A program made the position numbers and the translations under genes. Of a stretch of 64,000 nt of DNA, positions 2,451 to 60,772 are shown one piece after another. Origin of the DNA: Stegostoma tigrinum (taxonomy: Eukaryota); NCBI RefSeq assembly GCF_030684315.1, contig NC_081396.1, positions 1,240,001-1,304,000 of the forward strand, in the 5' to 3' direction. Below the pieces are notes generated by a model that made no database searches, was not told where the DNA came from, and was given only the letters and a program-made list of their open reading frames with translations. The stretch's first letter is position 1, and each line of letters begins with the position of its first letter.

Positions 2451-2609
2451 GCATTTTTTGCTGTGACAGAACATTGGATAGACGGATTTTTGGAAGAAGG
2501 CACCTGGCCCAAAATGTCAGCTTTCTTGCTCCTCTGGTGCTGCTTCGCCTGCTGTGTTTCTCCAACTCCACACTGTATTATCTCTGACTCCAGCATCGGC
2601 ATTTCTTTC

Positions 2610-3500
2610 TATCTCCCTTGGATATACTGGTTCAGGTGTAACCCATCCTTATGGTACAGGTTCAACCCGTCCTTACTGAACAGGTTCCAGCTTCCCTAGA
2701 ATGTGCTCCAATTATTCACATCATGGTAGCTCCACCTCCTCCACCAGTCCTGTAGACACGTGTTTGGCTGCACTATCTCCCACTTTGTTACCTCATAATC
2801 ACTTGGCACTGGGTGCAATGCAGAGATAACTACCTTGTCTGTCCTGGACTTCAGCTTCCAACCTGACTCCTTGAACTTGTTTTTCACTTTCTCAGACCTT
2901 TTCCTACCCATGTCATTGATACCAATGTGTGCCATGACTGTTGGTTGCTTATCCACCTTCTTACGGATCTTGAAGACACGATGTGAGACATCACAGACAC
3001 TGGCACCTGGTAGACAACATAGTGCCCATTCGTATCGTTTGCGCCCACAGAGCCGCCTGCCTTTGCCTCTTACTATTGAATCTCCAACTACAATTGCTCT
3101 ACTTTTCTTCCCCCTTCTCTTCTGTGCCACAGGGCCAGGCTGAGTACCAGAGACCTGTCCCCTATGGCCTTCCACTGGTCGAATGTGCTCCCCAACATTA
3201 TCCAAAATAGTATGCTTATTATTAAGGGGAGCAGCCACAGGGAATCCCTGCACTGTCTCCATATTCCCTTTCCCCCTCTTAACAGTAACCCAGTTACATG
3301 ATTCCTGTACCTTGGATACGACCACCTCCTTATAACTCTTCTCTATCAGCCCCTCAGCTTACCGAATGATCCAGAGTTCATCCGGCTCCAGCTCCAGTTC
3401 ACTAACGTGGTTTGTAAGGAGCTGGAGTTGAGTGCACTTCTCGCAGGTGAAGTCAGACTGGACACCAACAGTGACAATTACCTCCCACATCAAGATGAGA
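2610..3500 (-). mobile_element. CR1-type LINE ORF1 (SGNH/GDSL esterase-like domain), decayed
   Basis: ORF 2696-3325: RAIVVGDSIVRG...CCLPGA...HIGINDMGR, the esterase blocks characteristic of CR1 ORF1. Confidence 0.85.
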
Positions 3501-5693: not shown

Positions 5694-5985
5694 AGTCATT
5701 GCACGAGTCGTTTGCTCGTTCTTACCGCTAGGAGTCTCGTTGTACTGTAACAAGCAGCAATGTCAGAGAGCAATAGATCAGAGATGGTGAATAAGTACGT
5801 CCTGCCTGACTGCTGGACTGTATCATAAAACCCGTTGCAAGCAAAATCTGCCTGAAATGAATCGTCACCATTCATGCAACACCGGAATGTGTACTCAGTA
5901 CCAGAATAAATAATAGCGATTACCAGTGTAGCAACAAAATAAAGTGGCATATTCTCCTACTGGATGTGTGAGAAAACAAACAACT
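5694..5985 (-). pseudogene. TCR V pseudogene, paralogue of 110-415
   Basis: FLTHPVGEYATLFCCYTGNRYYLFWY*, then frameshifted EYTFR...FQADFACNGFYDTVQQSGRTYLFTISDLLLSDIAACYSTTR (second Cys lost). Heptamer position CCTAGCG (5732-5726), 23-nt spacer, GCAATGACT (5702-5694). The flank is homologous to 1-110. Confidence 0.8.
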
Positions 5986-9650: not shown

Positions 9651-10339
9651 CCCATTCGAACAACAACTGAAACAGACACGAATAATGAGCGCCTTCGATT
9701 GCATGCACGTGGTAAGTCTTCAGCCATCTGGAAAAATTTCGAAATTCACAGCTCTCCAATGGAATTCTGACATGTCTCTGACAGTTCCTCTTTGTTCCGC
9801 AGTTTATTTCCTTAGCCAATCTGGGAAATAGTTGAGTGACTGTTTAGTTGTGTTGACATCGACTGTTTATTTGGTTACCCTCTGATATACATTTGAGAGC
9901 TTGTTAGAATTCTGCACACTGAGGTGTTATTTGCTTACGATTGTACACAAACCCAAACCATCTGGAGTTACCATTAAGACATTATATACAGCGGTATAAA
10001 CATATTCTATCGCTGTGAAAACCTTAGAACACAGTAATGCAGTGCAGAGCTCGTCAACACTGCCCACAGATAGAGAACTTGGTGAAGTTATTCTTCGTTT
10101 GAAGCTCAATCGAGAAACGCCACCAAACAAAATCTGCTTTTTTTCTCCGAATCTCTGCAGAGTTTCGATAACATAAACTTGGTTTGCATTTTTGGGTGTT
10201 ATCAGTATCAGGCGAATAAAAACTGTTTGATTATGTCTCACAGGCACAGGTCAACGTCATCACGTGCACTTCCATCTTAAATTCAGAAAGCAGTGGTTGA
10301 GAAATATAATCTCCATGACTCCAATCTGACATCTGGCGG

Positions 10340-14961: not shown

Positions 14962-15380
14962 ATGGAAAATTCAATGTATGGACTCGTCATAAGTTTGTTT
15001 TTATTGAATTCCGGTAAGTGTTCCTTGCAAAAGATCATTTCCCCCTAAAAAAAACCTCCTTTTTGCCACTCCTTTGCCTTCTTGCTTCTTTGTCAACAGT
15101 GATTAGTGGAGAAGCTGCGATTGAGCAACAAGAGCAGATTGTCGCACAAGAAGGACGTTCAGTTGCAATCCGTTGTAATGCAGCCACAAGTGGCACCGAT
15201 AGCATCCACTGGTACAAACAACGAGAAAACCATGGCATGGAATTCATCCTATCTGCTATTCTTGGGAATGCTACTGAAGGGCGATTCAATCTATTTGTTG
15301 ACCCAAAAAGAAGTTATAACATTCTTAGTATTGCCAATCCAGTTCTGTCGGATGCTGGAGTTTACCACTGTGCAATGAGA
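14962..15380 (+). CDS. TRAV: T-cell receptor alpha/delta V segment V1 (leader 14962-15013, intron 15014-15099, V exon 15100-15380), open frame
   Basis: Leader MENSMYGLVISLFLLNS with phase-1 GTAAGT donor; acceptor tcaacag; VISGEAAIEQQEQIVAQEGRSVAIRCNAATSGTDSIHWYKQ...ILSIANPVLSDAGVYHCAMR followed directly by CACAGTG. Confidence 0.92.
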
Positions 15381-15419
15381 CACAGTGAGATAAAGACTGA
15401 GTGCTCCCGTACGATATCT
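15381..15419 (+). other. 23-bp-spacer recombination signal sequence of V1 (weak nonamer)
   Basis: CACAGTG (15381-15387), 23 nt, ACGATATCT (15411-15419; 5/9 match to ACAAAAACC). Confidence 0.85.
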
Positions 15420-19653: not shown

Positions 19654-19990
19654 GGTTTTTGCACTGGGTCAGAGCAGCTATGAGTCTCTATGGTCTCAGT
19701 GCGCAGAAATGTACTGCAGAACTTGTCAGGTCTGTCTTCAAAAATTTCAGCTGGATGATTCAGTATTGTCAGATGAAACTTTGAGGAAAATCTGTCCCGT
19801 GGAAATCTCTCTGCATTCCCACTGTACTGGCTTCCCTGCAGCAGAAACTCCATGGATCTGCAATAATGTAGACGGCATCAGAAGAAGCATATATCCGTAC
19901 CTAGAGTCTCTCTGAAATTTTGGTACAACTGTTCTTCATCTTCCTCAATCACGATGATGTGGTCAGTGTCTGTTCAAGTACATTGCCTCA
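19654..19990 (-). pseudogene. TCR V pseudogene with 23-RSS
   Basis: GNVLEQT/DHIIVIEEDEEQLYQNF..DICFF*CRLHYCRSMEFLLQGSQYSGNAERFPRDRFSSKF../IQLKFLKTDLTSSAVHFCALR (first Cys lost, Trp replaced by a stop, frameshifts). Heptamer CATAGAG (19692-19686), 23-nt spacer, nonamer GCAAAAACC (19662-19654). Confidence 0.88.
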
Positions 19991-24500: not shown

Positions 24501-25494
24501 TGATGAAACACGTTGTACCTACAAGCATGGAATAATAAAATTTCACAGTATCGAAAGAGGAGTTCCAGGCTCCCAAAACAACAGTCTTGTTCGTCCCATT
24601 CTTCATCCTGTCTTCTCGGCCAGCTAAATTCCTCACTTTCAAATATATATCCAGCTCTCTTTTCAAACCTTCCATTGTCTCTACTACTCTCCCAGGCAAC
24701 ACATTTCAAATCCAAAAAGTTCCTGAAGTAAAGAAGTTCATTCAGCTCTCTGCTGAGGGGTATTCTTCTGGTAATAGAGAAAAGAACAGAGGTGAACCTG
24801 AAGCCCAGTCTGATTTATGCATTGTTTTCCTTTCAAAGACAGCATAGCCTGTAGTATTCCTTTATTCCTAGCAGCAGCAAGACGCAACCACACATGAGCT
24901 TCCAATAAATCTGTTGACTTTCCTCACAATGAGAAGGCTTCACCATCGTATTGTCGGTCAGAATTTGTTCATTGGAATCTGCATACGTCTTCCTGTGACT
25001 GATTGCAAATTCTGTTCCCAATTTTCCTCTGCCATAGCCTTCAGCTCTGTGTATCTTTCTTGTCCCAGCTCAAAGACCTTTATTAATGTACTTTGTATAA
25101 GAAGATCTATTTTGCCACTATGGACTGGCCTGAGAATATGAGACATTGCAAATGAACGTATGCTATTTGCTTGAGGCATGGCCGATTGGATGAATAAATG
25201 ATCATCTATGTATACGTAAGAGAATTGGGGAGCTACATGATGACTTCCAGATCCAGCTCTTCATTTCACTTAGAGAATAAATACGTTACTTCCAAGATCA
25301 ACAAATGCTGTTAATCTCTGAATAGCGGTAGGACAGGCTCCAGCGCTTCACATCTGTGCCCTTCCTGCACAATCCTGTCATGCCGATCTCACTTCCAGTT
25401 CAAGTTCTGCCCAACTTTATCATTATAACTATCTGGCTGACTTGCACTGACACCAAAATTATAGCATTCATACCTTCACACAGAATAATCAAAC

Positions 25495-34641: not shown

Positions 34642-35075
34642 ATGTGTTCTTCACATTTCTTGCTGATAGGACTGATCTTGATGCCTGGTGAGTGTATTTG
34701 TTTCAGACTAATACTTGTTGAGTGTAATTCCTCCAATTTTTAATCTGCATTTTATATTCCTGTTGCAGGTACGAGTGGCATCGATTCAGTCTCTCAGGAT
34801 ACTTCTGATTTAACAGCTCAGGAAGGAGAGACTATCGCTCTGAACTGCAATTATTCCACGACTGATACCTTTCCTTACCTCTTCTGGTATATTCAACACC
34901 CAGGGAGTTCCCTGACATATATATTGAAGAGATACGGCAATGATCTGGGCGAGACTGCTGTAAATTTCCGCAGCAGGTTCACTGCTTCCTTGGACAACGA
35001 ACAAAGAATTGTTACGTTGAGAGTCCTTGAGGTTCTTGTCTCTGACTCCGCCGTGTATCATTGTGCACTGCGCCC
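34642..35075 (+). CDS. TRAV: T-cell receptor alpha/delta V segment V2 (leader 34642-34687, intron 34688-34768, V exon 34769-35075), open frame; absent from the ORF track
   Basis: Leader MCSSHFLLIGLILMP with GTGAGT donor; acceptor gttgcag; GTSGIDSVSQDTSDLTAQEGETIALNCNYSTTDTFPYLFWYIQHPGSSLTYILKRYGNDLGETAVNFRSRFTASLDNEQRIVTLRVLEVLVSDSAVYHCALR, a classic TRAV/TRDV pattern. Confidence 0.95.
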
Positions 35076-35114
35076 CACACTGTTATAGGGGCACAGTCAG
35101 CATGTACAAAAACT
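35076..35114 (+). other. 23-RSS of V2
   Basis: CACACTG (35076-35082), 23 nt, ACAAAAACT (35106-35114). Confidence 0.92.
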
Positions 35115-44684: not shown

Positions 44685-45202
44685 ATGGAATTGAGAGTTA
44701 CTTTTCTCCTCATCTCACTAAATTTCTTATTTTTCCCTTTTGGTGAGTGTGGCTGATAATTCTGTCAGAAATATTTAACGTGACATGTTGATACGTTCTG
44801 TTAGATCGGTATTTCTGCATTTTTGATTCATTTTACTTTGTACTTCATTGCATTGCATTGCGTTGTATTAAACTCATTTATACAATATTAAATTTAAGTT
44901 ATTTCTGTTTTTCTGCATACTCTCCGAAGCTTCTTCTAACAGCAATGAGGTGTCTCAATCTTCACAGCCAGTGGTCATTATCGAGGGAAAGACTGCCGTC
45001 TTCGCTTGTTCCACCACAGTAGCAGGGCGGGTACCACAGTGGTACAGTCAGTACCCGAACGGACACTTGAAGCATCTGGTGAGCGATGCCAGCGATCGGG
45101 GCAAGATCAAGGCTCGGTTCAATTCGACAGAGAAGACCAGCGCTTTGACTGTTCATGACGCTCGAATGATAGACAGTGCCACATATTTCTGTGCAGTAGA
45201 GA
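44685..45202 (+). CDS. TRAV: T-cell receptor alpha-type V segment V3 (leader 44685-44742, intron 44743-44929, V exon 44930-45202), open frame
   Basis: Leader MELRVTFLLISLNFLFFPF with GTGAGT donor; in-frame acceptor ctccgaag; ASSNSNEVSQSSQPVVIIEGKTAVFACSTTVAGRVPQWYSQYPNGHLKHLVSDASDRGKIKARFNSTEKTSALTVHDARMIDSATYFCAVE. Confidence 0.92.
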
Positions 45203-45241
45203 CACAGTGTAACGAAGATCGATGAGAACCGTACCAAAACC
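45203..45241 (+). other. 23-RSS of V3
   Basis: CACAGTG (45203-45209), 23 nt, ACCAAAACC (45233-45241). Confidence 0.93.
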
Positions 45242-46979
45242 TGCTCAGCGCAACACTCACAGTTTATACTCTGTGCAGTTGTCAAACTGCTGAGTGTTTT
45301 GCAACAATATTCCTCAGTTCCGTATAAGTTGACGCTGACCTGATCTGGGTTTGCACCTTAATATCAGACACGAAGGTGATATATATTTTTTTTAAAATTA
45401 AGCATTTTCTTTTACAGTAGAAAACTAATAGGACATGGCATCAGTGATCTTTTCCAAATATTGCCATGTTGTTGCTGAAGGTTTATATCTCAGATATTGC
45501 AAGCAATCCCCATATTCATAGGAGTTCAAAGCTCTAGGGTAAGAGTGTGTATAACCATGCAAGATTTAAACGCTTTCCCTGCTTCTGTCAGGCGCCAACA
45601 TTTTGGGTCTGATATTTTTCAAATTGACCACGACGAGGCATTCAGTTATGTCCCAAGACTTGTGAGTCGTTATTCATTGGAGCAAGGTCAGAAGTATAAG
45701 TATTCAATGTATAAACTTGTCAATATTTACAAAAAGACAGCAGGTGACAGAAACTGTTGTCTGTCTCCTTGAAGCAAAACACCTAAATGACATATTTGAT
45801 TGAGATGCTAAAATGATCAGTGGCAAAGGGCGGTCGCAATTCATTATTACCAACACTACAAAAAGTAATATCAATGAAAAATACAATACAGAAGCCGTCT
45901 CTTCGGCCCGCCAAGTCGGCACAGACACATGTTACCTTTCCTAACTTAAATGGCCTTCTCCTACAGAACGATATCCCAAACACACCTATAAAAGGTGTGA
46001 AATGCTAGTTACAATTAAATTGCAGTCTTTTGAAGAACTGAGATGTACAGGCAGAATAATATTTACTTCTACTTGTTAAAAACATGGTTAGGTGAAAGTA
46101 CTGGACTGTTTAGCCAATACAAATAGTGGGCAAAGTGTGACATTAAATAGCTCATTCAAAGGCATGTTGAAAAATGTGACCCATTCAATGCCTGAAAAAA
46201 TCATGTTCTGGGTTTGTGAAGCGTTTTCTACTTTTCTTTTAAAATGTCAAACTCGTTGAACAAAGAGCAGGTGCAGAAAGGTCGCAGAGTTCTGACTGAA
46301 TACCCAACCGTCGCTAATGCTGCACCATCAGCTCTAAGAGCAACTGTGAGCCACAGCACATTTCGCTTAATTTGAGTCTGTGGTTTCCACGGGTTCCATA
46401 GCTTCTGTTCGTTGTTCTTCTGACCCAATTGTATACTTGCATGATTGCAGCATAAAAATTAGGATATTTTGGCAAAAATATATGTGTCAAGATTTTAACA
46501 CCTTCCCTCCCTGTTACTAAAGAAAGATACACTGGTACTTGAAGGAATCCAGAAAATTTCACATCGGTTGTTTGCAACAATTGAGGTTTTTTTTTGAGGA
46601 GAATTTGAATAGATTACACTTGTGCTCATTGGAGTTGAGAAGAATGACAGGCAATCTTATTGACACATACCTTTCTCAGACACCTTGTATGGGGCATGCT
46701 GAACAGTTTCCCTGTGAGACAGTGTAGGAAAAGAATACATTATCTCAATGCAAGGATTTCAGACAGAGATAAGGAGGAAACTTTCCCTCAGAGCGCAGTG
46801 TATTTATGGAATTAATACACAGGCTGAAATACACAGTATTTGAATCAGTAAAGGATTCGAGCTTCATGGAATATTGCAGAAAGTTGGAATTGAGTATTGT
46901 CAGAACTAATCATGACCTCATCCCAGCGAAGACTGTACTGATGAATGCTTATTTCTGCTCCTACATGTTATTGTCCTGG

Positions 46980-47215
46980 ATTTGAGTTTGCTCGCTGAGC
47001 TGGAAGGTTAGTTTTCAGACGTTTCGTCACCATTCTAGGTAACAGCATCAGTGAGCCTCCGACGAAGTGCTGATGTTATGCCCTGCTTTCTATTTATCTG
47101 GTTAGGTTTCCTTGGGTTGGTAATATCATTTCCTGTTCTTTTTGTCAGGGGATGGATGATTGGCTCCAAATCAATGTGTTTGTTGATGGAGTTCTGGTTA
47201 GAATGCCATGCTTCT
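46980..47215 (-). mobile_element. 3' end of a second Penelope-like family with a hammerhead motif
   Basis: Minus strand EAWHSNQNSINKHIDLEPI-like C-terminus, then tca-CTGATGC-tgttacc tagaat ggtgac-GAAAC-GTC-tga (47054-47015). Confidence 0.7.
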
Positions 47216-47768
47216 GGTTACTGTCCCATGGAAGCATTTACAGCTCTGGAGAAGACGGTAGTCGACTGTCTTTCTAAACTGCTGCTGCTGTCCATACACT
47301 GCACATGCAGCTACAGTGTTATGAAGAAAGCCATTTCCAGGACGTCCAGAAAACGACTTTGAAGAAGTAAGCCATATTTACAATTCAATATGGTCTTTCC
47401 CTTGAAAACAATTATGGTGTGTTTGTATTATCATATCTCCTGCATCCTCGTACACAAAAAAATAGGCACACATCTCACGGGTTTGCAAAGGACTGGGAGA
47501 GAAATGAATGTCTTTCGGACAGCGTACAAAATAAAAGAAGTGTATAACTTGAAAGTCTAAAAAAAATGCAAATGCTGAACTCTGTTAAGATTTCATGAGA
47601 GGTCGTCATCGGGAATCTGAAGAGCACAAAATTATTGAATTAATTTGAAGATAATTAATGACAGAGAACATGGATAAATGTTCTGTTTATATTTGTTGCC
47701 TAATTATCTTGAAAATGTTTGATGAAGTAGTGAACAGATAGACCATTAGAATTCTGAATAACTACGGG

Positions 47769-47770
<2 letters not shown>

Positions 47771-47834
<64 letters not shown>
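47771..47834. repeat. (CA)n microsatellite, about 32 units
   Basis: Direct inspection. Confidence 0.97.
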
Positions 47835-47837
<3 letters not shown>

Positions 47838-48289
47838 CGTTCATAAAGGTATCCATGGCCTTAATTGACTGCACATGTCACAAGATTCTGCTGTTTTGGC
47901 TTTAACAATCAATCTAGTCTCTGAGAAGTCGTTGATCTCAGTACAAATGTTTTATTTACTTGGGTGTGCTGAGAAATGAGAAAACAAAAGCTCAAAATTC
48001 GTCTAAAACTGTAATGGAAAACAATAACAAGTTAACATTTTACAACTAAAATTTAATAATTGTTAACAATTGTATCACTATTGCCTGTCTGCAATTCAAC
48101 ACAAGCATACGAAACACTCTACAAGGAAGTAGAAAAAAAAAGACTTTTGACAGATTTCCAATGAGTGGAGCTCTGCTTATTCGCAATCATTTCAGGACCA
48201 TCATTGTGCCTGTATCAATATGACAAAAGAAAATTACAGAAAAGAACATGGTGTTGCCTAACATGTTGAACACGTAGGGCCAGGTTTAT

Positions 48290-49880
48290 GAACACAACTG
48301 GACTGGCGGTCTGAGCTATGTTTATTTTGATGCAAGGTATGTAACAGGGAAGATAAATAATCTTAGAGCCTGCATTAGTACATGGTAGCCATTGAAGAAG
48401 CTTGGTTACAAGAAGAGCAACTCAAACTCCTCGGAATTAGATGTGTAAGGCAAGATATGTATAATCAGTAGGAGAGTTGAACTGGTGTTTGAGAAGACTG
48501 TCAGATCCAAGAGATGATGTCTTATAGGGCTTATCCAATGAGACCATACTTAGAATTTAAGTGTAAGAAAAATGCAATCATATGATTTTGTTGTACTACC
48601 AGCATCCGAATAACCAGCGATCAATAGAGGAACAGGCCTTTAAGCAGATTATATGGTGGAGGCGGGGGCGGAGAAATGGAAAAGAAAAACAGTAGCGTTT
48701 TTGTAATGTGCAATTTTAACTTCTGCAACATTGGCAGGAATTGCCCTAATACCAGCGGCTTAGAGGAGGAGAATCTGTGAAGTCTAGATATCGAAGAAGA
48801 TTTCTCGCAGAAATATCTAGAAGATTCAGCTAGGAAAGGGGCTGGAAAGACGTTGCATTCAGAAGTGAGTGCGGCCAGTTGATGAAAGTTTCAGTGGTGG
48901 AACTTTTGGGATCATTAACCTGATGCCGTAAATTGCATGATAATTATGAATGAAGACATGATTGGTCCGACGGCGATCGTGTTGAAGTGTGTGTGGTGGA
49001 AGGGCCTGAGGGGAGGCTAATTACAACAGTATTAGGCACGGAATAGGGACATTAGATTGGAGTCGCTCTTTCAGGGTTACTACTTGTCTAATTTGCCGGA
49101 GTCTTTTCAAGGCCAATTTATCAGCTTTCAGGACCAGCATTTTCCCGTGTTGATGAAAAAAAGAAATGACAAGGTTCCATACCCTTTGTTGACACAGCAC
49201 TTGCAAAGCCCATTCAAAAACAAAAACAAAAAAAAAATCAGACTTAAGTAAGTTTCAGGAAACTGAAATCAAATAAGGCCTTTGACGAGTATGAGGGAAG
49301 CAAAGAAAAGTGTCAAAGCAAGAAAATGGGAGGGCGAGAAGGGGCCATGAAATCCTCTTGCCAATTAAGATTAAGGAGACTGCCAGGCGTATGCAACTTA
49401 TATATTACGAGTACAAGCATAACTATGGAAAGGATAAGTCCACTCAAGGACAAAGGACGAAATCTATGCGTCGAGCTGAAGGAAATTGCTGAACTGCTCA
49501 ACGAGTACTCAGATTTGTTGGTCACCAAGAAGACAGAAATAGATTATCGTAAAATAGAGTGTTATTTTCATATTTTTTCGTACATCAATAATGAGAAGGG
49601 AGATGAGAGGGCGCCTTGAAAGACATTATGGTCAGTAAGACACCAGGAGCTAATGGGAAATATCACATGATAAGGAGGATGCAAGACAGGGCATCTTTGG
49701 GACCTTCTATGAGATCTTTCTCGACTCCTTCAACATAGATGATATAACAGAAGTCTGGAGAATAGGCAACGTGGCTCTTATGTTGAAGAAGGGCAACAAT
49801 AGCGATCTACTGAGTTATAATCCCATGAGCTTTAAGTCAGTGGTAGGGACATTATTTGAATAAAGTATGAAGGGCTAGCA
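48290..49880 (+). mobile_element. Decayed CR1 ORF2 fragment (endonuclease to early RT)
   Basis: LSYVYFDAR-like start, ERISPLKDKGRNLCVE..IAELLNEY, WRIGNVALMLKKG, YNPMSFKSVVG. Confidence 0.75.
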
Positions 49881-50265
49881 CAATGTAGTGCTGTAAATAC
49901 TTGGGAGGGAGATAGAGAATTGAGGATATGTTTTTCGATTTCATCGCAGACCTCAGTATTGTATGTACCTTCAGCTGTTTTCCCGGCTTGGAGGCATAAC
50001 GTCATGGTTCATGAATTTTGGAGAATGACAGCGTTTTCAACCTGCAATTAATCCACATGTATACTAATATCATCTGCTCCAAAGTGCCACTAATGAAAAG
50101 CATAAAGCATTGAATTAATTGTGTTTATTTCCTCAAAGTGGATTCATGCGGCAACTCAACTATTATTCCTCTTGAGACTAACATCTTGAATAAATGAGGG
50201 AAGCATCGACTGTGTGACAGGCTTGGGTTCGCAGTTTTTGGGATTTATTGAGATACTCAAAGAGA

Positions 50266-52840
50266 ATGCATGGTCCAGCAAAGGGTATATTTTATGCCAT
50301 TGGCTATCCATTTCTTGCTGTTATTGGTGTTCCTGGTAAGCATTGAAACACACACAAAAAATTATTTAGTTTATGTGTTTATTTTTAAAACTTCCCAGAA
50401 ATGAGGACTCTTCTTTTTACGGTTTGGTCTTAATTTTGGATAACAATCCAATGCTATGGGAGAATAAGTGAGCCGAACTGAATACTTATCGCCTTCTAGA
50501 GACTGATACGTACATTAAAATTCATTTTATTATCGGGATCATGGAGTGTTTCAAGATAATTCCACTTCATTATGCTGTACATTAAATAAAATGCTGTTTG
50601 AATTGCTGAAATATAAAACATACAGCATGAAATTCCAACAGCATTAAGCTTCTGTACAAGTGAATAGAAGCGTTCTAACGTATTTAATTTTGATGAAAAA
50701 GACATGCCTTTATTTTGCAAGAGGACATACTGGTCATGCACCAATGATATCACGAGCTGTTTGAGACTTGGCTGAAAATTTCACACTGCCAGCTGGGGTG
50801 GGTTTACGTTCAGTTAACGAATCTGACAAACGAGTTTAGTGCCTATATGAATTACCAAAAAAATAGAAAAGTTAAAAAAAAGTTCGCTTAGATCAGTTAT
50901 GTCCCGCAGAGATATAAATTTATCATCTTTTTCTGGTCTATCCTTCATGTGATTCCAGACATGAGGAAATATCAGTGACTCTGAACTGTCGTCTAAAATT
51001 GTCGAGCAAGTGATTTCCCTGGCAATTAGTGATCATCTTGCAACTGAATGAACTACAATCTTTGTTACTGATGATGGACTTTTTCTTGTCCAGATAGACT
51101 TTAAACATTTGGGTTATATTTTTTGGGAAAATGTAGATTGCTATCATTAACAGATGTCATTGTCACTGGAAAAAGTGAGCATTGTTTGGTTATCTCTCGT
51201 TAGCATTTTACAAGGTTAATGCATGACTCCTGCCATACCCATTACAGTACGTCTTAAAAAATGTTTTATAGGAGTTTCGAAAAACACATTTTAGATCAGC
51301 ACATCGTGGAAACTTCGTCCCAGACGGCCAGCAACTTGGTTAAAAAAAGTAGAGTACCAGGAAGCCTCTGAAGATGAAAGGGGAAACAAGACCATTGAAA
51401 TAGGGAATTCCGCAGATTCAGCATTAACAGATAAAGGCATAACTATCATCGATGAAGCATTGATACCAACGATGCACAACATAGTTGCTTGGCGACACTT
51501 AGATTTCACGGACCTTCGAAATTTGGCAAGAATTGGAACGGTAAACCTGTGGATGTTTGGAAATTTAATGGATGAGATATGAAAGCCAGAACATTGTTGC
51601 AAGGGGTGAGAAGGCCGATCAATCAGCATAGACCTGTCGAATGGAAATTATTTGTTCTGCATTAAAGTACTGGCAGCAAATGTTTCAACTGAACTTAAAT
51701 TGGAAGGCGTGGATGGACATTGTGGCCAGAGGGCAGACTTTGTGATGAGCCACATGGCAGTATTTTGTCGAATGGCAAATGCTTAATTAGAATTGGGCTT
51801 TAACGATTTATTTGGCTCTGTCTGGTTCTGGAGGAAGTTGGACAGATCAATTGCTTTCTTCCTTGCAACAAATTGGTACAGCATTATCTCATGTTTCGAG
51901 TCCTGCCCTCAACAGCTCTCTATTTTAATCTCTTACAGCAAATTTGGTGACGATCATAATTCTATCAAGGGGACAATGTGGACTCTCTCGGTGTGTAACT
52001 TACTACTTGGAGGCAATAGCAGTGAGCGATTTCCTCGTCATTATCACTGGGTGCATTCTCAACCGAATCAGTCGCATCTACTTTACCTACAGTGCACTGT
52101 CTACAACTCCTGGGTGTGCACTGAGCGCCGTACTGGTCTACTTTAGCCGGGATGGCTCAGTATGGCTGACAGTGTCCTTCACCATTGACCGTTTTGTGTC
52201 CATCTGCTGCCAAAACCTGAAGAACGGATACTGCACGGAGAAAACAGCGTCACTGGTCATAGGCATTGTCTGTCTCGTGAATGTTATCAAGAATGTCCCT
52301 TTTTACTTTTCTTACAATCCTTTATACACTCTGAATGGTGTGCCCTGGTTTTGTGAAATCAAGTCAACATATTATATTTCATTCGCTTGGCGGGCCTATG
52401 ACTGGCTAGATCACATTTTAATGCCATTTATCCCATTTTTCCTCATTCTATTGCTCAACATCCTGACCATCCGTCATATCTTGACAGTCAGCCAAGCTCG
52501 TAGGAGACTCCAGGGCACTAAGCATCGCAGTGACCCGGAGTTGGCCAGCCGCAAGAAGTCCATTGTTCTGCTGTTCACCATCTCTCTCAGCTTCCTCCTC
52601 CTATGGGTCATCCAAGTTGTACATTTCCTTTACGTGCGTATTCCAGGAAAGGCTTACTTCTCTGGTTTGGATTTTAATGACCCTGATTACCATCTTCAAG
52701 AGGCGACCAACATGCTTCAGATAATCAATTCCTGCAACAATGTTTTCATCTACGCAGTGACTCAGAAAAGGTTCAGAGGGGAATTGAAGAGGCTGCTGAT
52801 GTGCCCCATTGACACTGTCACCCGTTGCAATAAAGAATGA
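50266..52840 (+). CDS. Intact class A 7TM receptor, GPR139/GPR142-like; exon 1 50266-50335, exon 2 51939-52840; 323 aa
   Basis: Exon 1 MHGPAKGIFYAIGYPFLAVIGVP with phase-1 GTAAG donor; acceptor tcttacag restores GVPANLV (TM1 Asn). TM2 AIAVSD, TM3 SVWLTVSFTIDRF, ECL2 Cys (PWFC), TM5 IPF..LLN, TM6 FLLLW, TM7 NVFIY, helix 8 RFRGEL. 972 nt spliced, with no internal stop. Confidence 0.9.
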
Positions 52841-53464
52841 AAACTGACCAAACCTCATCATGTTGTTTTTCTTCCATGAGGAAGACTCGGTTTGGAGGAG
52901 TTTGTCTGAAATCACTGGAAAGTTTTTAAATCAAGTGTTCACTATTCAGACTGTTAGCCCCAGCAGTGTCATGTTGCAAATACTAAACAGGTTCTGAAAG
53001 AATTGAGTCACTGCATGACTAAATGAGATCCTCAGTCTCTCAAATAAAATATTAGATTTTCACTATTTCAGAAGAAAACAAGATTTCAATAAATGTTCTG
53101 AATCAGTACCCAATACTCATCCAACACCACTGAAAGTGATAGATTTTCTGCTTACTTATATGATTAATCTTTGTGTTATTAATGTTCTTGGCATGTTAAA
53201 TGTCACGTTTCCTGCTTGCAACAGAAAATGCTTTAATTGGATTCAAACACTTGGCGATACCACAAACCCTTAAAACAGAGAGTTAAAGTGTTCCGTGCTA
53301 TGTGTTCTCCAATTGTAATTGTCCATTAACAAGTATTATTGCTCAGCCTATACCGAGGTGTGTTAAGATCGTATCACATTGTTGTGCGTCTGGTAAGTCT
53401 TGAGCATGGCTTTCCTCAAGGTGCATTAGAAAATAACTTGGTGATTGCACTGTCCACTTTTCAG

Positions 53465-53810
53465 GGAATATATCCCAATTCAACATTTTCTGACTGAAAG
53501 TCAATGCTGCAGCTTCGATGTTGATGTGCAATCTCATGTGCCCCAAATAAGCGGTATCATCACTGCACCAAATTGTACCCTAATACCCACTTACTTCACT
53601 GAAAATAATTCCAGTGTATCGAACGGTTCCTCAGCACACTTTGATATGAATACGTTCTGGGAGGTGTTCTGGAATATTGTCTCCTGTTTCTATGTACCAG
53701 GTCATTCTGTTCAAGTTTTTGTCTCAAGTTGACCTGCTGTTGGCAGTCCAGCCGTAAATATCTATTCCCATGCCATGGCTCTATGTATTTTCATTCTTCT
53801 GGGAACGTGA
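53465..53810 (+). pseudogene. Probable fragment of another class A GPCR (N-terminus to TM2)
   Basis: One frame: APNCT..ENNSSVSNGSS (N-glycosylation sequons), then FWNIVSCFYVPGHSVQVFVSS*PAVGSPAVNIYSHAMALCIFILLGT*; spacing fits TM1 (GxPGN) to TM2 (YLxAMAxxD), with both signature residues mutated. Confidence 0.4.
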
Positions 53811-55609
53811 ATCAAAACTGACATTTTAATCAACAAAAACTAAAACGAAAATAAAAAAATCATGAATCACATTCAGCGAAAGCAATTGCCTCTCGCTCTT
53901 GCAGTTAAGCAAGGTTATTTTAACTCCACGCACAATAACTTTGACAATAACAAGAGCGGTGTGTTCACGGCGACACTTCCAGAGAAGTGAATATTGAGGC
54001 CTCACCCAAGAAATGAGCGAAGTGTAAGAACAAGAGTATCCAATATGAGGTTAAACCCATTGAACATGAGATTATGAATCTCAACGATGAAGGATGGAGT
54101 GAACCAGTCTGACTAAAGCCACAAACTTGATCACAGACAGATAAATCTTTGAATGCAGTATGAGATAAATAAATCGAATTCCAAAAATCCAGGGTACCAA
54201 TACTTTTTGTTCAATCATTAACATTATTCACAGCTTCTACTTCTTACGCTGCAAGTCCTGAAAAAAAAACAACTTTGCTACGCATTTTCTTTTGTCTTTT
54301 TTTTCCCCCGGATTTCATATTAGTCTGATAATAGTCTAATATTTAAAGCAGACGACCTTAAAAATACATATCAATTATAATTACTAACCTGATGAAGAAA
54401 GAAATTATTCACTAATAGATATGCCATATTGGTTAATTTCATATTTACAAATCTGCTTCTCATCCAATGAACTAATTATGTTAGGAATAGATTGAGAACC
54501 TGCCTTTTATTCATCAGTGTCGTGTGGGCATTAGATAAGTTGTGCTCTGATGTGGATGCTAGATATAGATTCTGTGATTACTTGTAATCTGAAATGAATG
54601 TACAAGGCGGCATGGAAATTCAATTGTTATGAAAGCATCAGAACATGGCTGAAGAAGAGTCATATTGGAATCACAACATTAGTTCTGTTCATCTCTACAC
54701 AGATAATGAAATTAATTATGAGTTTTTCGAGCAACCGTTGCTTTATTTTATATTTCATCATGCACAGGATTGTTTTGAATAAATCAATATTCACATTAAA
54801 TCTTACCGTCGCGTTTGGTACGTCCTTGAAAATGTAAGTCATTGTCCTGCAGTATTGTCGCACAAAAGTCCGATTTCTGTTCACTTCATATTCAAGCTAA
54901 GTTTACTTTTCGATCTAAGGTATTTTAAAGAAAACAGTGACTTCCATAAATGTTCTGTTGACTTCATGCTCATGTCATATACACTCCCTTACTGGCGGAT
55001 CAAGGTGCCAAAGGATAGCAGACGTCTTATGCAAGAGCCAATAAGTATGGAGCTAGAAAAACAAAGTAGGTCAGACAGCACCCGAGGAGAAGCAAGTCAA
55101 TATTCTTTGAAGAAACACTTCGTGGGTGCTGTCTGACTGCTGTGATTTCCCAGTTCAAGATTTATTGACTTTGAATGAAGCTCGCTGTAATGTGGGGTAT
55201 CAATTTTGTCACGTGAATTTGACCATCACTCTGAAATATGCTTTTCTTCCTGCTTTGTGAACAATCACAATAGCTGGATCGTGGAGTCTCTAGCTCCTGA
55301 ATGTTGCCAAAGCTGTTGTTTAAAACAGAAAAAAAATGACTGGCAGGGTTAATGAGAAATGTTGGAACATGATGCAACATGGCTACAAATCAAGCCATAA
55401 TTCATCGGGAAGAATGGCAAAATTCCCCGGTTTTGATTCTGGAATCATTGTATCATGTAAATCCATCAATATTGATGCACATCTTAGCGTTTAAATTGTG
55501 ACGAAGGTGCGAAGGTAGTGGTTTTACCCCACACAAATTTGAATACTGCCTAATGTTTTTATGCACACTCCATACTTTAAAAAAAGCGGTCACAGCATCA
55601 TTTGCATGG

Positions 55610-55741
55610 NNNNNNNNNNNNNNNNNNNNNNNNNNNNNNNNNNNNNNNNNNNNNNNNNNNNNNNNNNNNNNNNNNNNNNNNNNNNNNNNNNNNNNNNNNN
55701 NNNNNNNNNNNNNNNNNNNNNNNNNNNNNNNNNNNNNNNNN
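55610..55741. other. Assembly gap (N run)
   Basis: 132 N. Confidence 1.
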
Positions 55742-55929
55742 GACAGACACATACACACGTTTTATTATCACTGGCTATTCATGAACCCACCACACACTGA
55801 TATGCATTTATGCAAAATTTGACCCACCTGAGCTACCTGATTCCTTGTCCATGTATAAGTTGCTTTGGATTCATGGGGTGAAGACAATCTCTCTATCGCA
55901 AACCATTGCTGTAAGTTGATGTAAGTTGA

Positions 55930-57560
55930 AACTCCCTCAAAAAAGGACGGAAACATCTCTTTGGAGGTACTGTTGCATTGTAAGTGGAGGAATTGATGGA
56001 GAACGATATGTTGGATGCGACGGTTGGGAGTGTGAAATGTGACGGCTTTATTTTCTATTTGGGGAGGGAATGTGAGGGCAGAAGTATTGGAAACACAAGA
56101 GATGTGTTTGAGGACATTTTGGACAACCAGAGAGGTAAGTTATGAAATGTGAGGATATCTAGGGCATGTGGGAGAGCCCCATGTAGAAAGTCAACACTGC
56201 AGAGGGTGAGGAATTGGGAGAATGGCTAATCGTTATTTCCGGAAGGTGGGTGAGCCGAAGGTGTCGCCTGGATAACAGTGGGAGTAGGTGATTTTGAAAC
56301 AGATGCCATATTCGAGGCAGACACTAGAGATGGAGAAAGAGAGGTACAAGAAGGAGATGGAGATATTGGAGCTGGTCTCGGTGATTGTGAGAATGGTGCA
56401 AAAGCTGTCAGTAAAGTTGAAGAACTGTGCAAGCTCCTCGTGGAAGCACCGATGCTGTCATCAATATAACATAGGAAGACGTGTGAGAAAATGCCAGTGT
56501 ACCAACGGAAGAGGGACTGTTACACTTATTCTACAAAAAGACAGGCATAGTCTGGGCCCATGTGCGTGCTCACTTCCACAGCCACAGTGTGTCGAAAGTG
56601 GGTATATTTAAAGGAGAAGTTGTAAAGTGTAAGGATGAGGTTGTTTAAGTGGATGAGGGTGTCGGTGCTGGGAACAAGGGGCGAGGGAATGATTATCCAT
56701 TGTCAACATGAGGTGTGGCGTAATCAGGAATTTGGAGGAGGTGGAGAACACAGGTGGTGTGCGAGAAATGGATGGGCGTTCTTGCACCGGGCGAGAATAC
56801 CAGAATTTGGGGAAGCAGATACAAGTCCATTGGAGCAGAAGCAGGCAGAGGCAATGGGTCTTTTGGGGAAGTCAGGTTTACAGATTCTGGGAAGCAGATA
56901 GAATCGGGTGGTGTGGGGCTGTGGAATGATCAGTGCGGAGTTTGTGTGTGGGAGGGCTCCGAGGGTGATGAGGTTGTGATTGATATGCGAGATGCTAGTT
57001 TGGTGGCCAGGCGTGAGGACAAGATTGAGGGGCTTCTGGGAGGAGGTCTCAGTGAGTTGGCGCTGGGCCGCGCATATATAAATTTCACTGCACCATACTA
57101 CTACTGTGCCCTCATTAACTGTGGGTTTGAATGTGAGTCTAGGATGAGATTGAAAGGAACGGAGGGCTGCACATTCCGTTGGAGAGAGGTTGAAGAGAAT
57201 GTGCCGGGTTGAGAGGTTGATGTGATCGATTTTGTGACGACACTTGGAAATGAGGATTTCAAGAGAGGGTAGGAGGCCATGGGGTGTGTGCTGGAGGAAT
57301 TCCTCCACCTCCATTGCATTTGTTCCTCATATGCGGCTTTCCACTCACACACCTCCCAGACGCCCACTGGTCTGTATGTATATCCTTCTTGAGGAATACC
57401 TTGCAATGAAGGTCAGCATTGTAACTTAGGATCAAGCATGGACGAATTTCACGGGTGTTCTGGCGAACACCTGCATAAGAGGAAGGATTGTTTTGTGCCT
57501 TAAAATGGAGGTGTGGGTAGGAGTGTAACATTAAGTGACTGGAAGGTAATGATATTTTAT
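55930..57560 (-). mobile_element. Penelope-like element RT region, decayed
   Basis: ORF 56724-57314: NLSPTECAALRS..LTFKP..GTVVVW..RFYLLPRICKPDFPKRPIASAC, the PLE RT N-terminal motifs (KPADKG, LPKIHK, RPI). Confidence 0.85.
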
Positions 57561-58379
57561 CATTTTCAAAACTGAAATTATATTGTCTTTCACCATTTCG
57601 AGCATAACTGCTCAGAGGTCACACAAGACCAGATTAAAATCCAACTGATTATTAGAAATATCACGCTTTCTAACGTTGCTGCTTCATCAGGTGCCTTAAA
57701 CCGCTGAAGAGGCAGCCATTCGAAAGCTGTGACTTCAAATGAACCAGTTGCATTGTAATCTGTTGTGTTGTGACTTCTGACTTTGCCAACACCAGCCCAA
57801 CACTGGCACGTCCAAATCACGTAAAATTAATTCTGAACGAATGCAGAACTCAATGTACTTATGTTGGTTTGGACATTCCTTGTTTAGAATTTAACTTGAT
57901 CACCGTTCCCTTTTCAATCTATGCGGCAACGTTTTATTGAATAAAGAAGTTTTGTCACAAGACATTGTTTCAGAATATGGTGAAATTAATTTACGATGGA
58001 ATTTCTTCACCCAGACAGCCGTGCATATCTGGCATTGTCCAAAGTACACTTGTGGAGTTTCTTCACTGAAAACATTTTAATAGGAGGTAACTGCTTTCTT
58101 GGACATATTGGGAAGTTTACAGCTTGGATGACGTGTATGAAAGGAGCCAGTGTGGTGCAACTGTGTTGTGATCTTATTAATTGAAAGGTTCTGGCTTGAT
58201 AGCCTGAATGGTCTGTGTTGCTTCGTATTTATTATGTTTTCCCGACATATCTAATGACCTAAACCCAGGAAATCAGTAATTATCCAAAGAAAATAGAAAT
58301 TTGATTTGCACACTCAGTCAAACTTAGTGCTGGTTATCTTCCCCTTTTCACAATTAATGTGCAGCACATCTTGAAATCT

Positions 58380-58748
58380 TTCGACTATCAGTCAAAGTCG
58401 AAACACTAATATGAATGCAACCAGCTTCAAGATACATGTAGTAATATGGAGACTACATGCAGTAACATGGAGACATAGTCATAATGTGTCACCTGAATTT
58501 AATGTTGTTTTGGTTGAAGACAGAAGGAAAAGAACGAAGGAAAGGAAGAAATTGTATAAGAGATTGCGAATTTTATCAGCTCTGTATAGAAGGGGAAAAT
58601 CACCAGCAGAAGAGCGACACTGTTTTCTAATGGAGCTCAGTAGTCCAAATCCATTTTAAGTAACGATCTTGTGTTCGAGGACGCCAGCATGTATCACTGT
58701 GTGATGAAGGCACATTGTGACAAAGTGCAATCGGCCTGTACATTATTA
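58380..58748 (+). pseudogene. Decayed TCR V pseudogene (V1-like 3' end)
   Basis: RILSALY../..SILSNDLVFEDASMYHCVMK (compare V1 ILSAIL..ILSIANPVLSDAGVYHCAMR); heptamer CACATTG (58711-58717), 22-nt spacer ending TGT, ACATTATTA. The 5' boundary is uncertain. Confidence 0.6.
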
Positions 58749-59157
58749 TGCTTACTGTTGTATCTCTGCTGTCATGTGAGACATTTCCCACTGCAGGAGC
58801 TTTTGCAATATCAACTATTTTCAGCGAAAACAAAACTACTGACACATATTTAAACATGTATCTTGTTGAGCTTCATAATGTTATAAAGACTACTGCAGAT
58901 GAACTGCATAGGAACACGTGAAATGTACTTTTCTTTGTTCAGTTCAGCAGCACACGACTTGGGTAACACAGAAGAAAAGAACGTCTGAGAATGAAAAGCT
59001 GGAATTTAGTTGCCACCTCCAGTAGTTAAGCAGAATGAGCCATACATCTGGCAACTGCAGTACTTCAATTCAGAACTTCCCAATTCTGTTTTCTGATAAA
59101 GAGAACTGCACACAGAATAATTCTAATTTAAGAAACATCGAGAAGATTTTATTCATA

Positions 59158-60036
59158 TTACCGTGAAAAGAAACCATTTAAAACGGAGAAGGTATTCATT
59201 ATCATCTTCTTCAGCTGCTTTCTGAACTTGGACTGAGAAACAGCATATATGAAGACGTTGCTACAAGTACCAAGTAATTGGAAAACTTTGATGGTCTTTT
59301 GACGGTCAATTGAAATTCCTGGTGTTAAAGTCGGCATCGACTTTATTTCACGGGTAGAGAACATAAATGACATAAGTAACCCAAAGAAGAAGGAAGCTGA
59401 GAGAAATGCTGAAGAGCAGGACAACAGACATTTCCTGGTCGTCACCATTCTCAACTCGCCAGAGCCTCCTGCTAGCCTGGCTGGCTGCAAGGTTGAGTCT
59501 TACCGTCACGACTTTGAGCAGCAGAATGAGGACAGATGGTGGAAAAAAGAAGTTAATATTCGTGCTCGTCAAATGTAGACCTGCCAGACTGTCAAGGAAC
59601 AGTAAATGGCCATGATATCAAAAAGACAGGGGACCTCATGCACAAAGTATAAAGGCTGGTACATGAAGTCATAAGGAATGTTCTTTATGAGGCTCAGTGC
59701 ACAGATGACTGCCATGACTCGCAACACAGTTAACACAGTGCTGCATCTTGCCTTCAGGGTCTTGGAGGAGATGGCCACAAAACGGTCAATAGTAAAAGCC
59801 AATGTCTACCAAAGTGATGCATCCCGTGACATAGAGGAGCACATCACTAACACTGCATGCTTGAGTAACAGACAGAATACTGTGCCTAAAGTCGTTTCTG
59901 GGGATCCGGTTGAGTAAACAAGCGCTGGTAAACAAGACAAGTAAGTCAGCCACCTCTATGGATACCAGGTAGAAAGCAATACACCATGAGACTTCACACT
60001 GCCTTTGGGAGAGAATTATAACTGGTATGAGGGTGG
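59158..60036 (-). pseudogene. GPR139-like receptor pseudogene (exon 2), paralogue of 50266-52840
   Basis: Acceptor ttgttgcag at the same phase-1 position; ATLIPVIILSQRQCEVSWCIAFYLVSIEVADLLV, AFTIDRFVAI, IKNIPY, SVVLLFSISLSFLLLW and CSNVFIYAVSQSKFRKQLK lie in different frames (several frameshifts). Exon 1 not found. Confidence 0.9.
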
Positions 60037-60636
60037 CTGCAACAAATAAAGAGAGATGTTACCCAACGAGCTGTAACACACTAGCTACAGCTTTTTTCAA
60101 ATCTTTTACTGAAACTCTCTTCCTCCACCAGAACTCACAAAAGCTCATTCATACCATTTTCCATACAGTTGCCACCTTTGTGCTTGGTGAATAACCTCTC
60201 CAGCTCCGTCACTTTTTCGATGCTAATACTTCTGACCTGTAAATTTGAAAATCCCCCTGGTTTCTCAGAATTCATGAATAAACAATACCATCAGAATTCG
60301 AAAAGTGCCTCAATTTATGTCCTTTTGTGAATGCATGTTATTGATGCTGGATGATGTTATTAATTATCAGTACTCAAACAGATTCATCATTCAATACCAC
60401 GCAGTGCATTTTATCTTTCAGCCATCGAATAAACTGATGACCCAGAGATACAGAGGCTTATAATTTTTTACGTGTGAAGAAGTGGACTTGTGTTCAGGTG
60501 CCACATTCTCGTCCGCTTTCGACAATCAGTTGAGGTCCTACGTCAAAAAAGGAAACTTCTTTTCCTATCTCTAAAGTGCTTGAAATTATTTCATGTCTTT
60601 TAGATTCCATCTTACTTACATCATTGTTCTTGGTGA

Positions 60637-60772
60637 NNNNNNNNNNNNNNNNNNNNNNNNNNNNNNNNNNNNNNNNNNNNNNNNNNNNNNNNNNNNNNNN
60701 NNNNNNNNNNNNNNNNNNNNNNNNNNNNNNNNNNNNNNNNNNNNNNNNNNNNNNNNNNNNNNNNNNNNNNNN
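60637..60772. other. Assembly gap (N run)
   Basis: 136 N. Confidence 1.

What the first reader, a model, noticed from the sequence alone, without database searches (positions are those of the whole stretch)
44685..60036. GPR139-like orphan GPCR genes interleaved with TCR V segments
Seen: an intact two-exon 323-aa class A GPCR lies 5 kb downstream of functional V3 in the same orientation. A V relic (58380-58748) lies beyond it, followed by a second, pseudogenised paralogue, so the receptors are inside the V array rather than at its edge. Established: mammalian TRA/TRD neighbours olfactory receptor genes, TRB contains trypsinogens, and mammalian GPR139/GPR142 respond to aromatic amino acids. 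Inference: a duplicated GPR139-like family has undergone birth-and-death inside a shark antigen-receptor locus. It may share the locus's T-cell chromatin and enhancer, making it a candidate lymphocyte chemosensory or metabolite-sensing family. I do not know of a description of this arrangement but cannot search the literature.
Basis: partly seen in the sequence, partly recalled or inferred. Interest (0 to 1): 0.8.

Follow-up and report, generated by a model that had tools for sequence, protein, structure and literature searches.

The report
Shark orphan receptor gene among TCR segments
An intact gene and a dead copy of a large, shark-expanded and unstudied receptor family sit among T-cell-receptor V segments, much as smell-receptor and trypsinogen genes do in mammalian TCR loci, and nothing here links them to immune cells.

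Summary
A two-exon, 323-codon class A GPCR gene (50266-50335 and 51939-52840, + strand) lies 5 kb downstream of an intact TCR alpha/delta-type V segment with a 23-RSS. Beyond it lie a half-length V relic (58572-58709) and a dead paralogue.

Three points need correcting:
- The dead paralogue is on the minus strand.
- It is not a local duplicate of the intact gene.
- No short-read contig bridges the N gap at 55610-55741 that separates the gene from the relic.

The receptor belongs to a very large elasmobranch family that RefSeq labels "probable GPR139". Human GPR139 is its closest solved relative. However, the arginine at 6x51 that marks GPR139/GPR142 is glutamine here, and none of the 121 closest family members has R or K there. 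An aromatic-amino-acid ligand cannot therefore be assumed.

No RNA run holds the gene, so the lymphocyte idea is untested. The best reading is passive co-residence of two families that both evolve by gene birth and death. Known parallels are OR10G3 at the mammalian TRA/TRD border and the trypsinogens inside TRB.

This scan has already noted the same arrangement in at least ten other windows on this piece of the genome.

The parts
15018..15419 (+). V1: TCR alpha/delta-type V segment. The ORF ends in ...YHCAMR. RSS: perfect heptamer at 15381, 23-nt spacer, poor nonamer (5 of 9).
34642..35114 (+). V2: intact V segment. Leader exon 34642-34687, V exon 34769-35075. RSS: CACACTG, 23-nt spacer, ACAAAAACT.
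44685..45241 (+). V3: intact V segment. Leader starts at ATG 44685, and the V exon runs from the acceptor AG at 44941-42 to 45202. RSS 45203-45241: CACAGTG, 23-nt spacer, ACCAAAACC. The donor may be at 44743 or 44747; by my frame arithmetic only 44747 keeps the reading frame.
50266..50335 (+). GPCR exon 1: 23 codons plus 1 nt, covering the N-terminus and most of TM1. Donor GTAAGC follows.
51939..52840 (+). GPCR exon 2, from N1.50 to the stop codon. Carries D2.50, DRF, W6.48, Q6.51 and NVFIY.
53043..53093 (+). Two AATAAA motifs about 200-250 nt after the stop codon. These are candidate polyadenylation signals only, with no transcript evidence.
55610..55741 (.). Assembly gap (N). It is intergenic and no short-read contig bridges it.
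58572..58717 (+). V relic covering FR2 to FR3 only, with two stops, ending ...MYHCVMK. A degenerate heptamer CACATTG follows; no recognisable nonamer.
59164..60043 (-). Pseudogene of the same GPCR family (exon-2 equivalent). It has 3 frame changes and 4 in-frame stops and keeps the family-consensus ...LLWVTYV. No exon 1 was found; the gap at 60637-60772 lies upstream of it.

Best explanation
The window is part of a field of shark TCR alpha/delta-type V segments. It holds three intact V segments on the + strand and several decayed ones. One working gene and one dead copy of an elasmobranch-expanded class A GPCR family are interspersed among them. The family descends from the GPR139/GPR142 branch, but this subfamily has lost that branch's hallmark basic residue in the ligand pocket.

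The receptor most likely works as an ordinary G-protein-coupled receptor for an unknown ligand, either a peptide or a small molecule. Across paralogues the outward-facing half of the protein varies while the signalling half stays fixed.

Its position among V segments is most likely passive. Both families grow and decay by local segmental duplication in the same duplication-prone region. The same is seen for olfactory-receptor genes at the mammalian TRA/TRD border and trypsinogen genes inside TRB.

Shown: gene structure, family membership, motif states, the dead copy, and adjacency to V3. Inferred: G-protein signalling, ligand diversification, and the absence of a functional link to T cells.
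For: GENE AND FOLD
- Pfam 7tm_1 is matched at 63.2 bits.
- D2.50, R3.50, W6.48, N7.49 and Y7.53 are kept in 119-121 of 121 family members.
- The AlphaFold model of the 81%-identical orthologue P0002 is a 7TM bundle with helix 8 (pLDDT 81.8, pTM 0.81). It matches peptide-type class A receptors.

FAMILY
- 569 proteins score E<=1e-5 among 1836 candidates. Of the 120 listed, 116 are from named sharks and rays and 4 are unnamed.
- 100 representatives of 50%-identity clusters score E<=1e-30.
- The family profile hits GPR139 at 1.6e-19; the next receptor scores 1.1e-12.
- Outer-half TM positions are more variable than inner-half positions (mean entropy 1.21 vs 0.75, Mann-Whitney p 3.5e-5).

PASSIVE CO-RESIDENCE
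- The dead copy is not a duplicate of the live one, so copies of different lineages have been shuffled into this spot.
- The V segments likewise include intact and decayed copies on both strands.
- Mammalian precedents are documented.
- Family members also lie on other large chromosomes.
Against: - Expression could not be tested. All 4 runs that hold the gene are DNA and none is RNA, so a lymphoid or any other tissue pattern is not excluded.
- Unchecked notes of this scan report the same GPCR-and-V interleaving in at least ten other windows, 0.38-8.2 Mb further along this piece. That is more regular than a single chance insertion.
- Among the 120 closest paralogues, most per species sit on one contig: Rhincodon 10 of 11, Cetorhinus 5 of 5, Stegostoma 5 of 7, Heterodontus 9 of 16. 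This could mean a long-conserved linkage.
Confidence: 0.7

Rival explanations
1. Chemosensory reading. The family is a large, undescribed elasmobranch chemoreceptor repertoire (smell, taste or solitary chemosensory cells), and this gene is one of its members. Its presence among V segments would reflect shared chromatin suited to genes that are chosen one at a time.
For: - The family is large and shows birth and death.
- Outer-half positions are variable and the signalling half is fixed.
- Pocket position 6.51 is hypervariable in the wider family: Y17, N11, F7, R6, S5, K4 and others among 79 representatives.
- Passages of the whale-shark genome paper state that cartilaginous fishes have few olfactory receptors and few GPCRs overall.
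Against: - There are no expression data of any kind.
- The catshark sensory-organ paper reports no GPCR among the 50 genes most specific to its 'brain & olfactory epithelium' library (passage). This is a weak negative.
- The entropy pattern is common to many diversified GPCR families.
- The predicted ECL2 beta-hairpin and the best fold matches are to peptide receptors.
Confidence: 0.15
2. The receptors share the T-cell chromatin and enhancer of the antigen-receptor locus and act as a lymphocyte chemosensory or metabolite-sensing family.
For: - The gene lies on the same strand as, and 5 kb from, an intact V segment.
- Unchecked notes report repeated co-occurrence along the same piece, and one note places GPR139-like genes beside NKp30-like genes on another piece.
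Against: - No RNA evidence exists.
- The known nested genes in mammalian TCR loci are, from general knowledge, not T-cell genes.
- Inference: if J-C lies downstream, any deletional rearrangement using V1-V3 would excise this gene from that chromosome. That is a poor design for a gene needed in mature T cells.
- The metabolite-ligand analogy with GPR139 fails at 6x51.
Confidence: 0.07
3. Assembly artefact. The GPCR, relic V and pseudogene are brought together by a misjoin at the N gap.
For: No contig in 4 runs bridges 55610-55741.
Against: - V3 to the GPCR is free of N, so the core adjacency does not depend on the gap.
- Contigs of 1.5-4.8 kb in all 4 runs (2 samples) end at 52579 with 0 differences over 51900-52579.
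- Short-read contigs break everywhere in this stretch, not only at the gap (table 8).
Confidence: 0.05

Closest known systems
Human GPR139 (and its paralogue GPR142), class A orphan receptors activated by L-Trp and L-Phe
   Same: - GPR139 is the closest solved relative by sequence: E 6.3e-9 with the single protein and 1.6e-19 with the family profile, seven orders of magnitude better than the next receptor.
- Both have W6.48 and an NxxxY motif without the usual proline at 7.50. An Asn aligns with GPR139 N271.
- The nearest bony-vertebrate relatives keep a basic residue at 6.51: R in coelacanth and a teleost, K in salamanders.
   Different: - Identity is only about 22-25%, so this is not an orthologue.
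- R244 at 6x51 occurs, according to PMC8807744, only in GPR139/GPR142 and is needed for ligand recognition. It is Q here and Y in 97 of the 121 closest members; none has R or K.
- F109 at 3x33 aligns with Y, and H187 at 5x43 aligns with D in the HMMER alignment.
- GPR139 is a single-copy gene. This family has hundreds of copies in sharks and rays.
Olfactory-receptor genes at the 5' border of mammalian TRA/TRD (OR10G3) and trypsinogen genes inside TRB
   Same: Members of an unrelated multigene family lie in the germline beside or between TCR V segments (passages in PMC8945572 and PMC7824213).
   Different: - The gene family and the vertebrate class are different.
- Here the receptor gene has V-type sequence on both sides within 14 kb.
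- By unchecked scan notes the interleaving recurs over megabases, whereas OR10G3 marks a locus border.
Multigene chemoreceptor families (OR, TAAR, V1R)
   Same: Class A fold, large copy number, intact and dead copies side by side, and a variable outer half with a fixed inner half.
   Different: - These genes have two coding exons, with the split at TM1.
- There is no sequence kinship closer than class A.
- Chemosensory expression has not been shown.

Membership tests
Class A (rhodopsin-family) GPCR | Match to the Pfam 7tm_1 profile above the gathering score | tested here: met
   63.2 bits against a cut-off of 30.5, E 3.5e-17, covering profile positions 7-260 of 260
Class A (rhodopsin-family) GPCR | Activation microswitches: D2.50, D/ERY at 3.49-3.51, W6.48, NPxxY at 7.49-7.53 | tested here: met
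   D29, D82-R83-F84, W221 and N266...Y270 are present. In the family they are kept in 120, 120/121/113, 121 and 119/119 of 121 sequences respectively. The prolines at 6.50 and 7.50 are replaced (I and V). Numbering is by offset from anchor residues.
Class A (rhodopsin-family) GPCR | Seven-helix bundle with helix 8 | tested here: met
   Tested on the 81%-identical natural orthologue P0002, not on the spliced window protein. pLDDT 81.8, pTM 0.81. At least 500 solved GPCR chains match at E<=0.001.
GPR139/GPR142 | Closest known relative by sequence | tested here: met
   GPR139 is the top PDB hit with the single sequence and with the profile. GPR142 has no solved chain among the hits.
GPR139/GPR142 | Arginine (or another basic residue) at 6x51, stated to be unique to GPR139/GPR142 and critical for ligand recognition (PMC8807744) | tested here: not met
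   The window gene has Q224. Zero of the 121 closest family members have R or K (Y 97, Q 7, H 4, L 4, E 3, F 2, and D, N, S, T once each). In the wider family, 10 of 79 representatives that cover the position have R or K. Eight of those 10 were looked up; the 7 with a named organism are shark or ray genes, and the eighth cluster has a skate member.
GPR139/GPR142 | Other pocket residues shown by mutagenesis: F109 3x33, H187 5x43, N271 7x38, W241 6x48 | tested here: inconclusive
   In the HMMER alignment, F109 aligns with Y, H187 with D, N271 with N and W241 with W. By offset numbering, position 5.43 is H157. Two of the four are kept, and the alignment in TM5 is uncertain by one residue.
GPR139/GPR142 | Orthology: clusters with GPR139 or GPR142 in a tree that includes both | not tested
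   No tool gave a full bona fide GPR139/GPR142 sequence that I could put in a tree. About 25% identity to human GPR139 makes orthology very unlikely.
GPR139/GPR142 | Activation by L-Trp or L-Phe | not testable with these tools
   Needs a cell-based assay.
TCR alpha/delta V gene segment (V1-V3) | Leader exon, V-set domain with conserved C...W...YxC, and a 23-spacer RSS | tested here: met
   V3 matches V-set at 31.1 bits against a cut-off of 26. The RSSs of V2 and V3 match 6-7 of 7 heptamer and 8 of 9 nonamer positions with a 23-nt spacer. V1 has a perfect heptamer and a poor nonamer.
TCR alpha/delta V gene segment (V1-V3) | Closer to TCR alpha/delta V domains than to Ig V domains | tested here: inconclusive
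   The best solved matches to V3 are TCR alpha chains (8.7e-12). The top hit of V1 is an antibody-type construct (1.5e-14), followed by TCR alpha chains. The homologues of V2 are unnamed 'Ig-like' proteins of bony vertebrates.
TCR alpha/delta V gene segment (V1-V3) | Linked to TRAJ/TRAC or TRDC and used in rearranged transcripts | not testable with these tools
Non-antigen-receptor genes nested in a TCR locus | An unrelated gene lying between V segments in germline DNA | tested here: inconclusive
   An intact V lies 5 kb upstream with no gap. The only downstream V-type sequence in the window is a half-length relic at E 0.006, beyond an unbridged gap. Intact V segments further downstream are known only from unchecked notes.

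The most novel reading that the evidence does not exclude
This GPR139-derived family is the large chemoreceptor repertoire that sharks and rays have seemed to lack. Its main galeomorph expansion has grown together with TCR alpha/delta V segments over megabases of one chromosome. The proposed reason is that both gene types are chosen one at a time and use the same kind of repressive, duplication-prone chromatin. As a side effect, V-J rearrangement would delete receptor genes somatically in T cells.
Probability: 0.12. Interest if true: 0.85.

Novelty: new variant of a known kind. Interest (0 to 1): 0.4.

Why it matters
Cartilaginous fishes are described as poor in olfactory receptors and in GPCRs generally (passages of PMC8455134). 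Yet this family has at least 100 distinct 50%-identity clusters at E<=1e-30.

I found no paper that names the family in sharks. The searches were 'GPR139' with 'shark', 'GPR139' with cartilaginous/elasmobranch/chondrichthyan terms, and 'coupled receptor 139' with shark, skate, catshark and ray. The library lacks most subscription journals, and supplements were closed, so gene lists there could still mention it.

If the family's tissue of expression were found, it would give a new handle on shark chemosensation or neuro- and immunomodulation.

The loss of the GPR139/GPR142 hallmark R6x51 in the subfamily next to the V segments, with R or K kept in other shark subfamilies and in coelacanth, teleost and salamander relatives, gives a concrete starting point for finding ligands.

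The nesting in a V field is a shark counterpart of a known mammalian pattern. By itself it is not a new mechanism.

Tried and rejected
- Linking GPCR contigs to TCR V contigs through V homologues: V3 gave no candidates. V2 gave 20 hits among 22 candidates, none from a named shark or ray. No conclusion.
- Expression: the look-up of sequencing runs (kind rna) listed 4 holders, none recorded as RNA. It says nothing about transcription.
- Fold search: it confirms a class A fold but does not discriminate. TRH, neuromedin U and neurotensin receptors rank first; GPR139 ranks 50th but has the highest identity, 22%.
- Protein Atlas: it returned only automatic 'probable GPR139' chordate clusters and generic 7tm_1 clusters.
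- 'Recent local duplication' of the two GPCR copies: rejected.
- More family copies in the window: tblastn with 8 family proteins found only the two loci, plus one weak piece at 24756-24902 (E 0.086).
- A blank look-up of earlier findings around the window and blank word look-ups mean nothing.
- Species: not determined here. The best hit is 92% to Rhincodon typus, and no protein in the collection is identical to the window's. 'Zebra shark' comes only from earlier notes.

Full report
WHAT IS IN THE SEQUENCE

The window has two N gaps, at 55610-55741 and 60637-60772.

On the + strand an ATG at 50266 opens a 70-nt exon that ends at 50335 before GTAAGC. An acceptor AG at 51937-38 opens a second exon whose frame stays open to the stop at 52838-52840. 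70 + 899 nt make 323 codons.

The exon-2 ORF (298 aa) matches Pfam 7tm_1 at 63.2 bits, against a cut-off of 30.5. The 23 residues of exon 1 match the start of the 323-aa Chiloscyllium plagiosum protein P0002 at 21 of 23 positions. Five of 8 family proteins find exon 1 by tblastn, at E 4.6e-8 to 3e-4.

THE V SEGMENTS

V3 has a leader starting at ATG 44685 and a V exon ending ...YFCAVE. It is followed by CACAGTG, a 23-nt spacer and ACCAAAACC. It matches Pfam V-set, and its best solved relatives are TCR alpha chains at 8.7e-12.

V2 (34642-35114) is likewise intact with a 23-RSS. V1 (15018-15419) has a perfect heptamer but a poor nonamer.

All three V segments and the GPCR are on the + strand. The GPCR start lies 5.0 kb beyond the V3 RSS, with no N between them.

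THE RELIC AND THE SECOND RECEPTOR COPY

With V1 as the query, tblastn finds 58572-58709 at E 0.006. Identity is 40% over 47 aa, there are two stops, and the match ends ...MYHCVMK. A degenerate heptamer CACATTG follows. This is the best V-like match outside V1-V3 in the window; the next scores E 0.061. Only FR2 to FR3 survives, 58380-58571 shows nothing, and nothing V-like lies at 60-64 kb.

The second receptor copy is on the minus strand (60043-59164). It has 3 frame changes and 4 in-frame stops. It is about 50-52% identical to family members such as P0008, P0011 and P0015. The intact gene ranks only 52nd of 121 against it. The two copies are therefore not a local duplication.

THE GAP

Four runs hold the region, from 2 samples of 1 study. 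None is recorded as RNA, and each holds 0.94-0.96 of the sampled words including the intron. I take them for DNA.

Laid on 51900-57899, their contigs reach both sides of 55610-55741 but none bridges it. Contigs break often throughout the stretch.

Over 51900-52579 all four runs agree with the window with no difference. At 52823 all four show C>A (complete in two runs, partial in the other two), which changes Arg to Ser five codons before the stop.

Contiguity across the gap is thus open. The gap is intergenic, so frame is not an issue.

THE FAMILY

The exon-2 protein finds 569 proteins at E<=1e-5 among 1836 candidates. Most are labelled 'probable G-protein coupled receptor 139'. The best hits are Rhincodon typus at 92% and C. 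plagiosum at 81%. No protein identical to the window's is in the collection.

A full HMMER scan of 1.84 billion representatives gives 100 clusters at E<=1e-30. At 33-35% identity come single 'probable GPR139' genes of salamanders, coelacanth and a teleost.

Human GPR139 is the closest solved relative, at 6.3e-9 with one sequence and 1.6e-19 with a 35-sequence profile. The next receptor scores 1.1e-12.

In a FastTree tree of all 121 sequences (midpoint-rooted; supports not inspected), the window gene groups with P0001 and P0002. This is an orectolobiform-only branch with a long stem.

IS IT A GPR139?

PMC8807744 (passages read) states that R244 at 6x51 occurs only in GPR139 and GPR142, and that a basic residue there is critical for ligand recognition.

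- In the window gene the aligned residue is Q.
- Among the 121 closest members it is Y in 97, Q in 7, and never R or K.
- In the wider family, 10 of 79 representatives that cover the site have R or K. Eight of those 10 were looked up: 7 are genes of named sharks or rays, most on other large chromosomes, and the eighth cluster contains a skate protein.
- The coelacanth and teleost relatives have R and the salamander relative has K.

The family therefore descends from the GPR139/142 branch. The subfamily at this locus has changed a key pocket residue, so an aromatic-amino-acid ligand cannot be carried over.

The signalling motifs are intact. The outer halves of the helices vary more than the inner halves (mean entropy 1.21 vs 0.75, p 3.5e-5). 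The residue numbers are by offset from anchor residues and may be off by one where helices bulge.

FOLD

The model of P0002 is a confident 7TM bundle with helix 8 and an ECL2 hairpin. Its best fold matches are peptide receptors. This does not discriminate between families.

CONTEXT AND INTERPRETATION

IMGT papers (passages) give OR10G3 as the 5' border gene of mammalian TRA/TRD. They place trypsinogen-like genes between TRBV29-1 and TRBD1. Nesting of an unrelated multigene family in a TCR locus is therefore a known pattern.

The window also holds weak V relics on the minus strand. Both families thus show turnover here.

Unchecked notes of this scan report the same interleaving in at least ten windows, 0.38-8.2 Mb further along the same piece, together with IgM and IgNAR constant clusters. 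They also report the family on other pieces. All those windows lie beyond my window's end, so this window may be near one edge of that region.

Among the 120 closest paralogues, most per species share one contig. The counts are Rhincodon 10 of 11, Cetorhinus 5 of 5, Stegostoma 5 of 7, Heterodontus 9 of 16, C. punctatum 7 of 11 and C. plagiosum 4 of 8. Tandem duplication alone predicts this. I could not test whether those contigs carry V segments.

VERDICT

The placement is best read as passive co-residence (0.7). A chemosensory role (0.15) and a lymphocyte role (0.07) remain untested for want of RNA data. A misjoin is unlikely to matter (0.05).

I found no paper describing the family or the arrangement (passages). 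Supplements were closed and could hold gene lists that mention it.

The scan has found this arrangement before on other DNA of the same genome.

Noticed in passing
window 19694-19759 (-), 10022-10198 (-), 5889-5972 (-), 154-225 (-): Weak V-like relics on the minus strand (tblastn E 0.061, 0.20, 0.45 and 0.91). The relic at 19.7 kb ends ...SSAVHFCALR and is followed by a degenerate heptamer, a 23-nt spacer and GCAAAAACC. The V field therefore contains decayed segments in both orientations.
   Followed up: partly
window 15018-15419 (+): V1 has a leader-like start and the V domain in one open frame with no evident leader intron. Its RSS nonamer matches only 5 of 9 positions. Its best solved match is an antibody-type construct rather than a TCR chain.
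   Followed up: no
window 49326-49619 (+); protein P0001: A transposon-like ORF lies about 650 nt upstream of GPCR exon 1. It resembles the first ~50 residues of the 386-aa Rhincodon model P0001 (compared by eye). The other orthologues start with MHGPA.... The first exon of that public model may be a transposon fragment.
   Followed up: no
window 56724-57314 (-) and 2175-3325: Transposon-like ORFs and a GC-richer block at 56-58 kb. A contig of one run (X4) skips 56443-56835, a possible insertion/deletion difference.
   Followed up: no
window 24756-24902 (-): A weak match to TM3 of family proteins (E 0.086 with P0011). It may be a third, almost erased receptor relic.
   Followed up: no
window 52823: All four DNA runs show A where the window has C (CGT Arg to AGT Ser, five codons before the stop). 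This may be a polymorphism or a consensus difference of the assembly.
   Followed up: partly
proteins P0243, P0256, P0238: The coelacanth and teleost 'probable GPR139' relatives have Ser instead of the toggle Trp at 6.48, together with R at 6.51. The salamander relative has W6.48, P6.50 and K6.51.
   Followed up: partly
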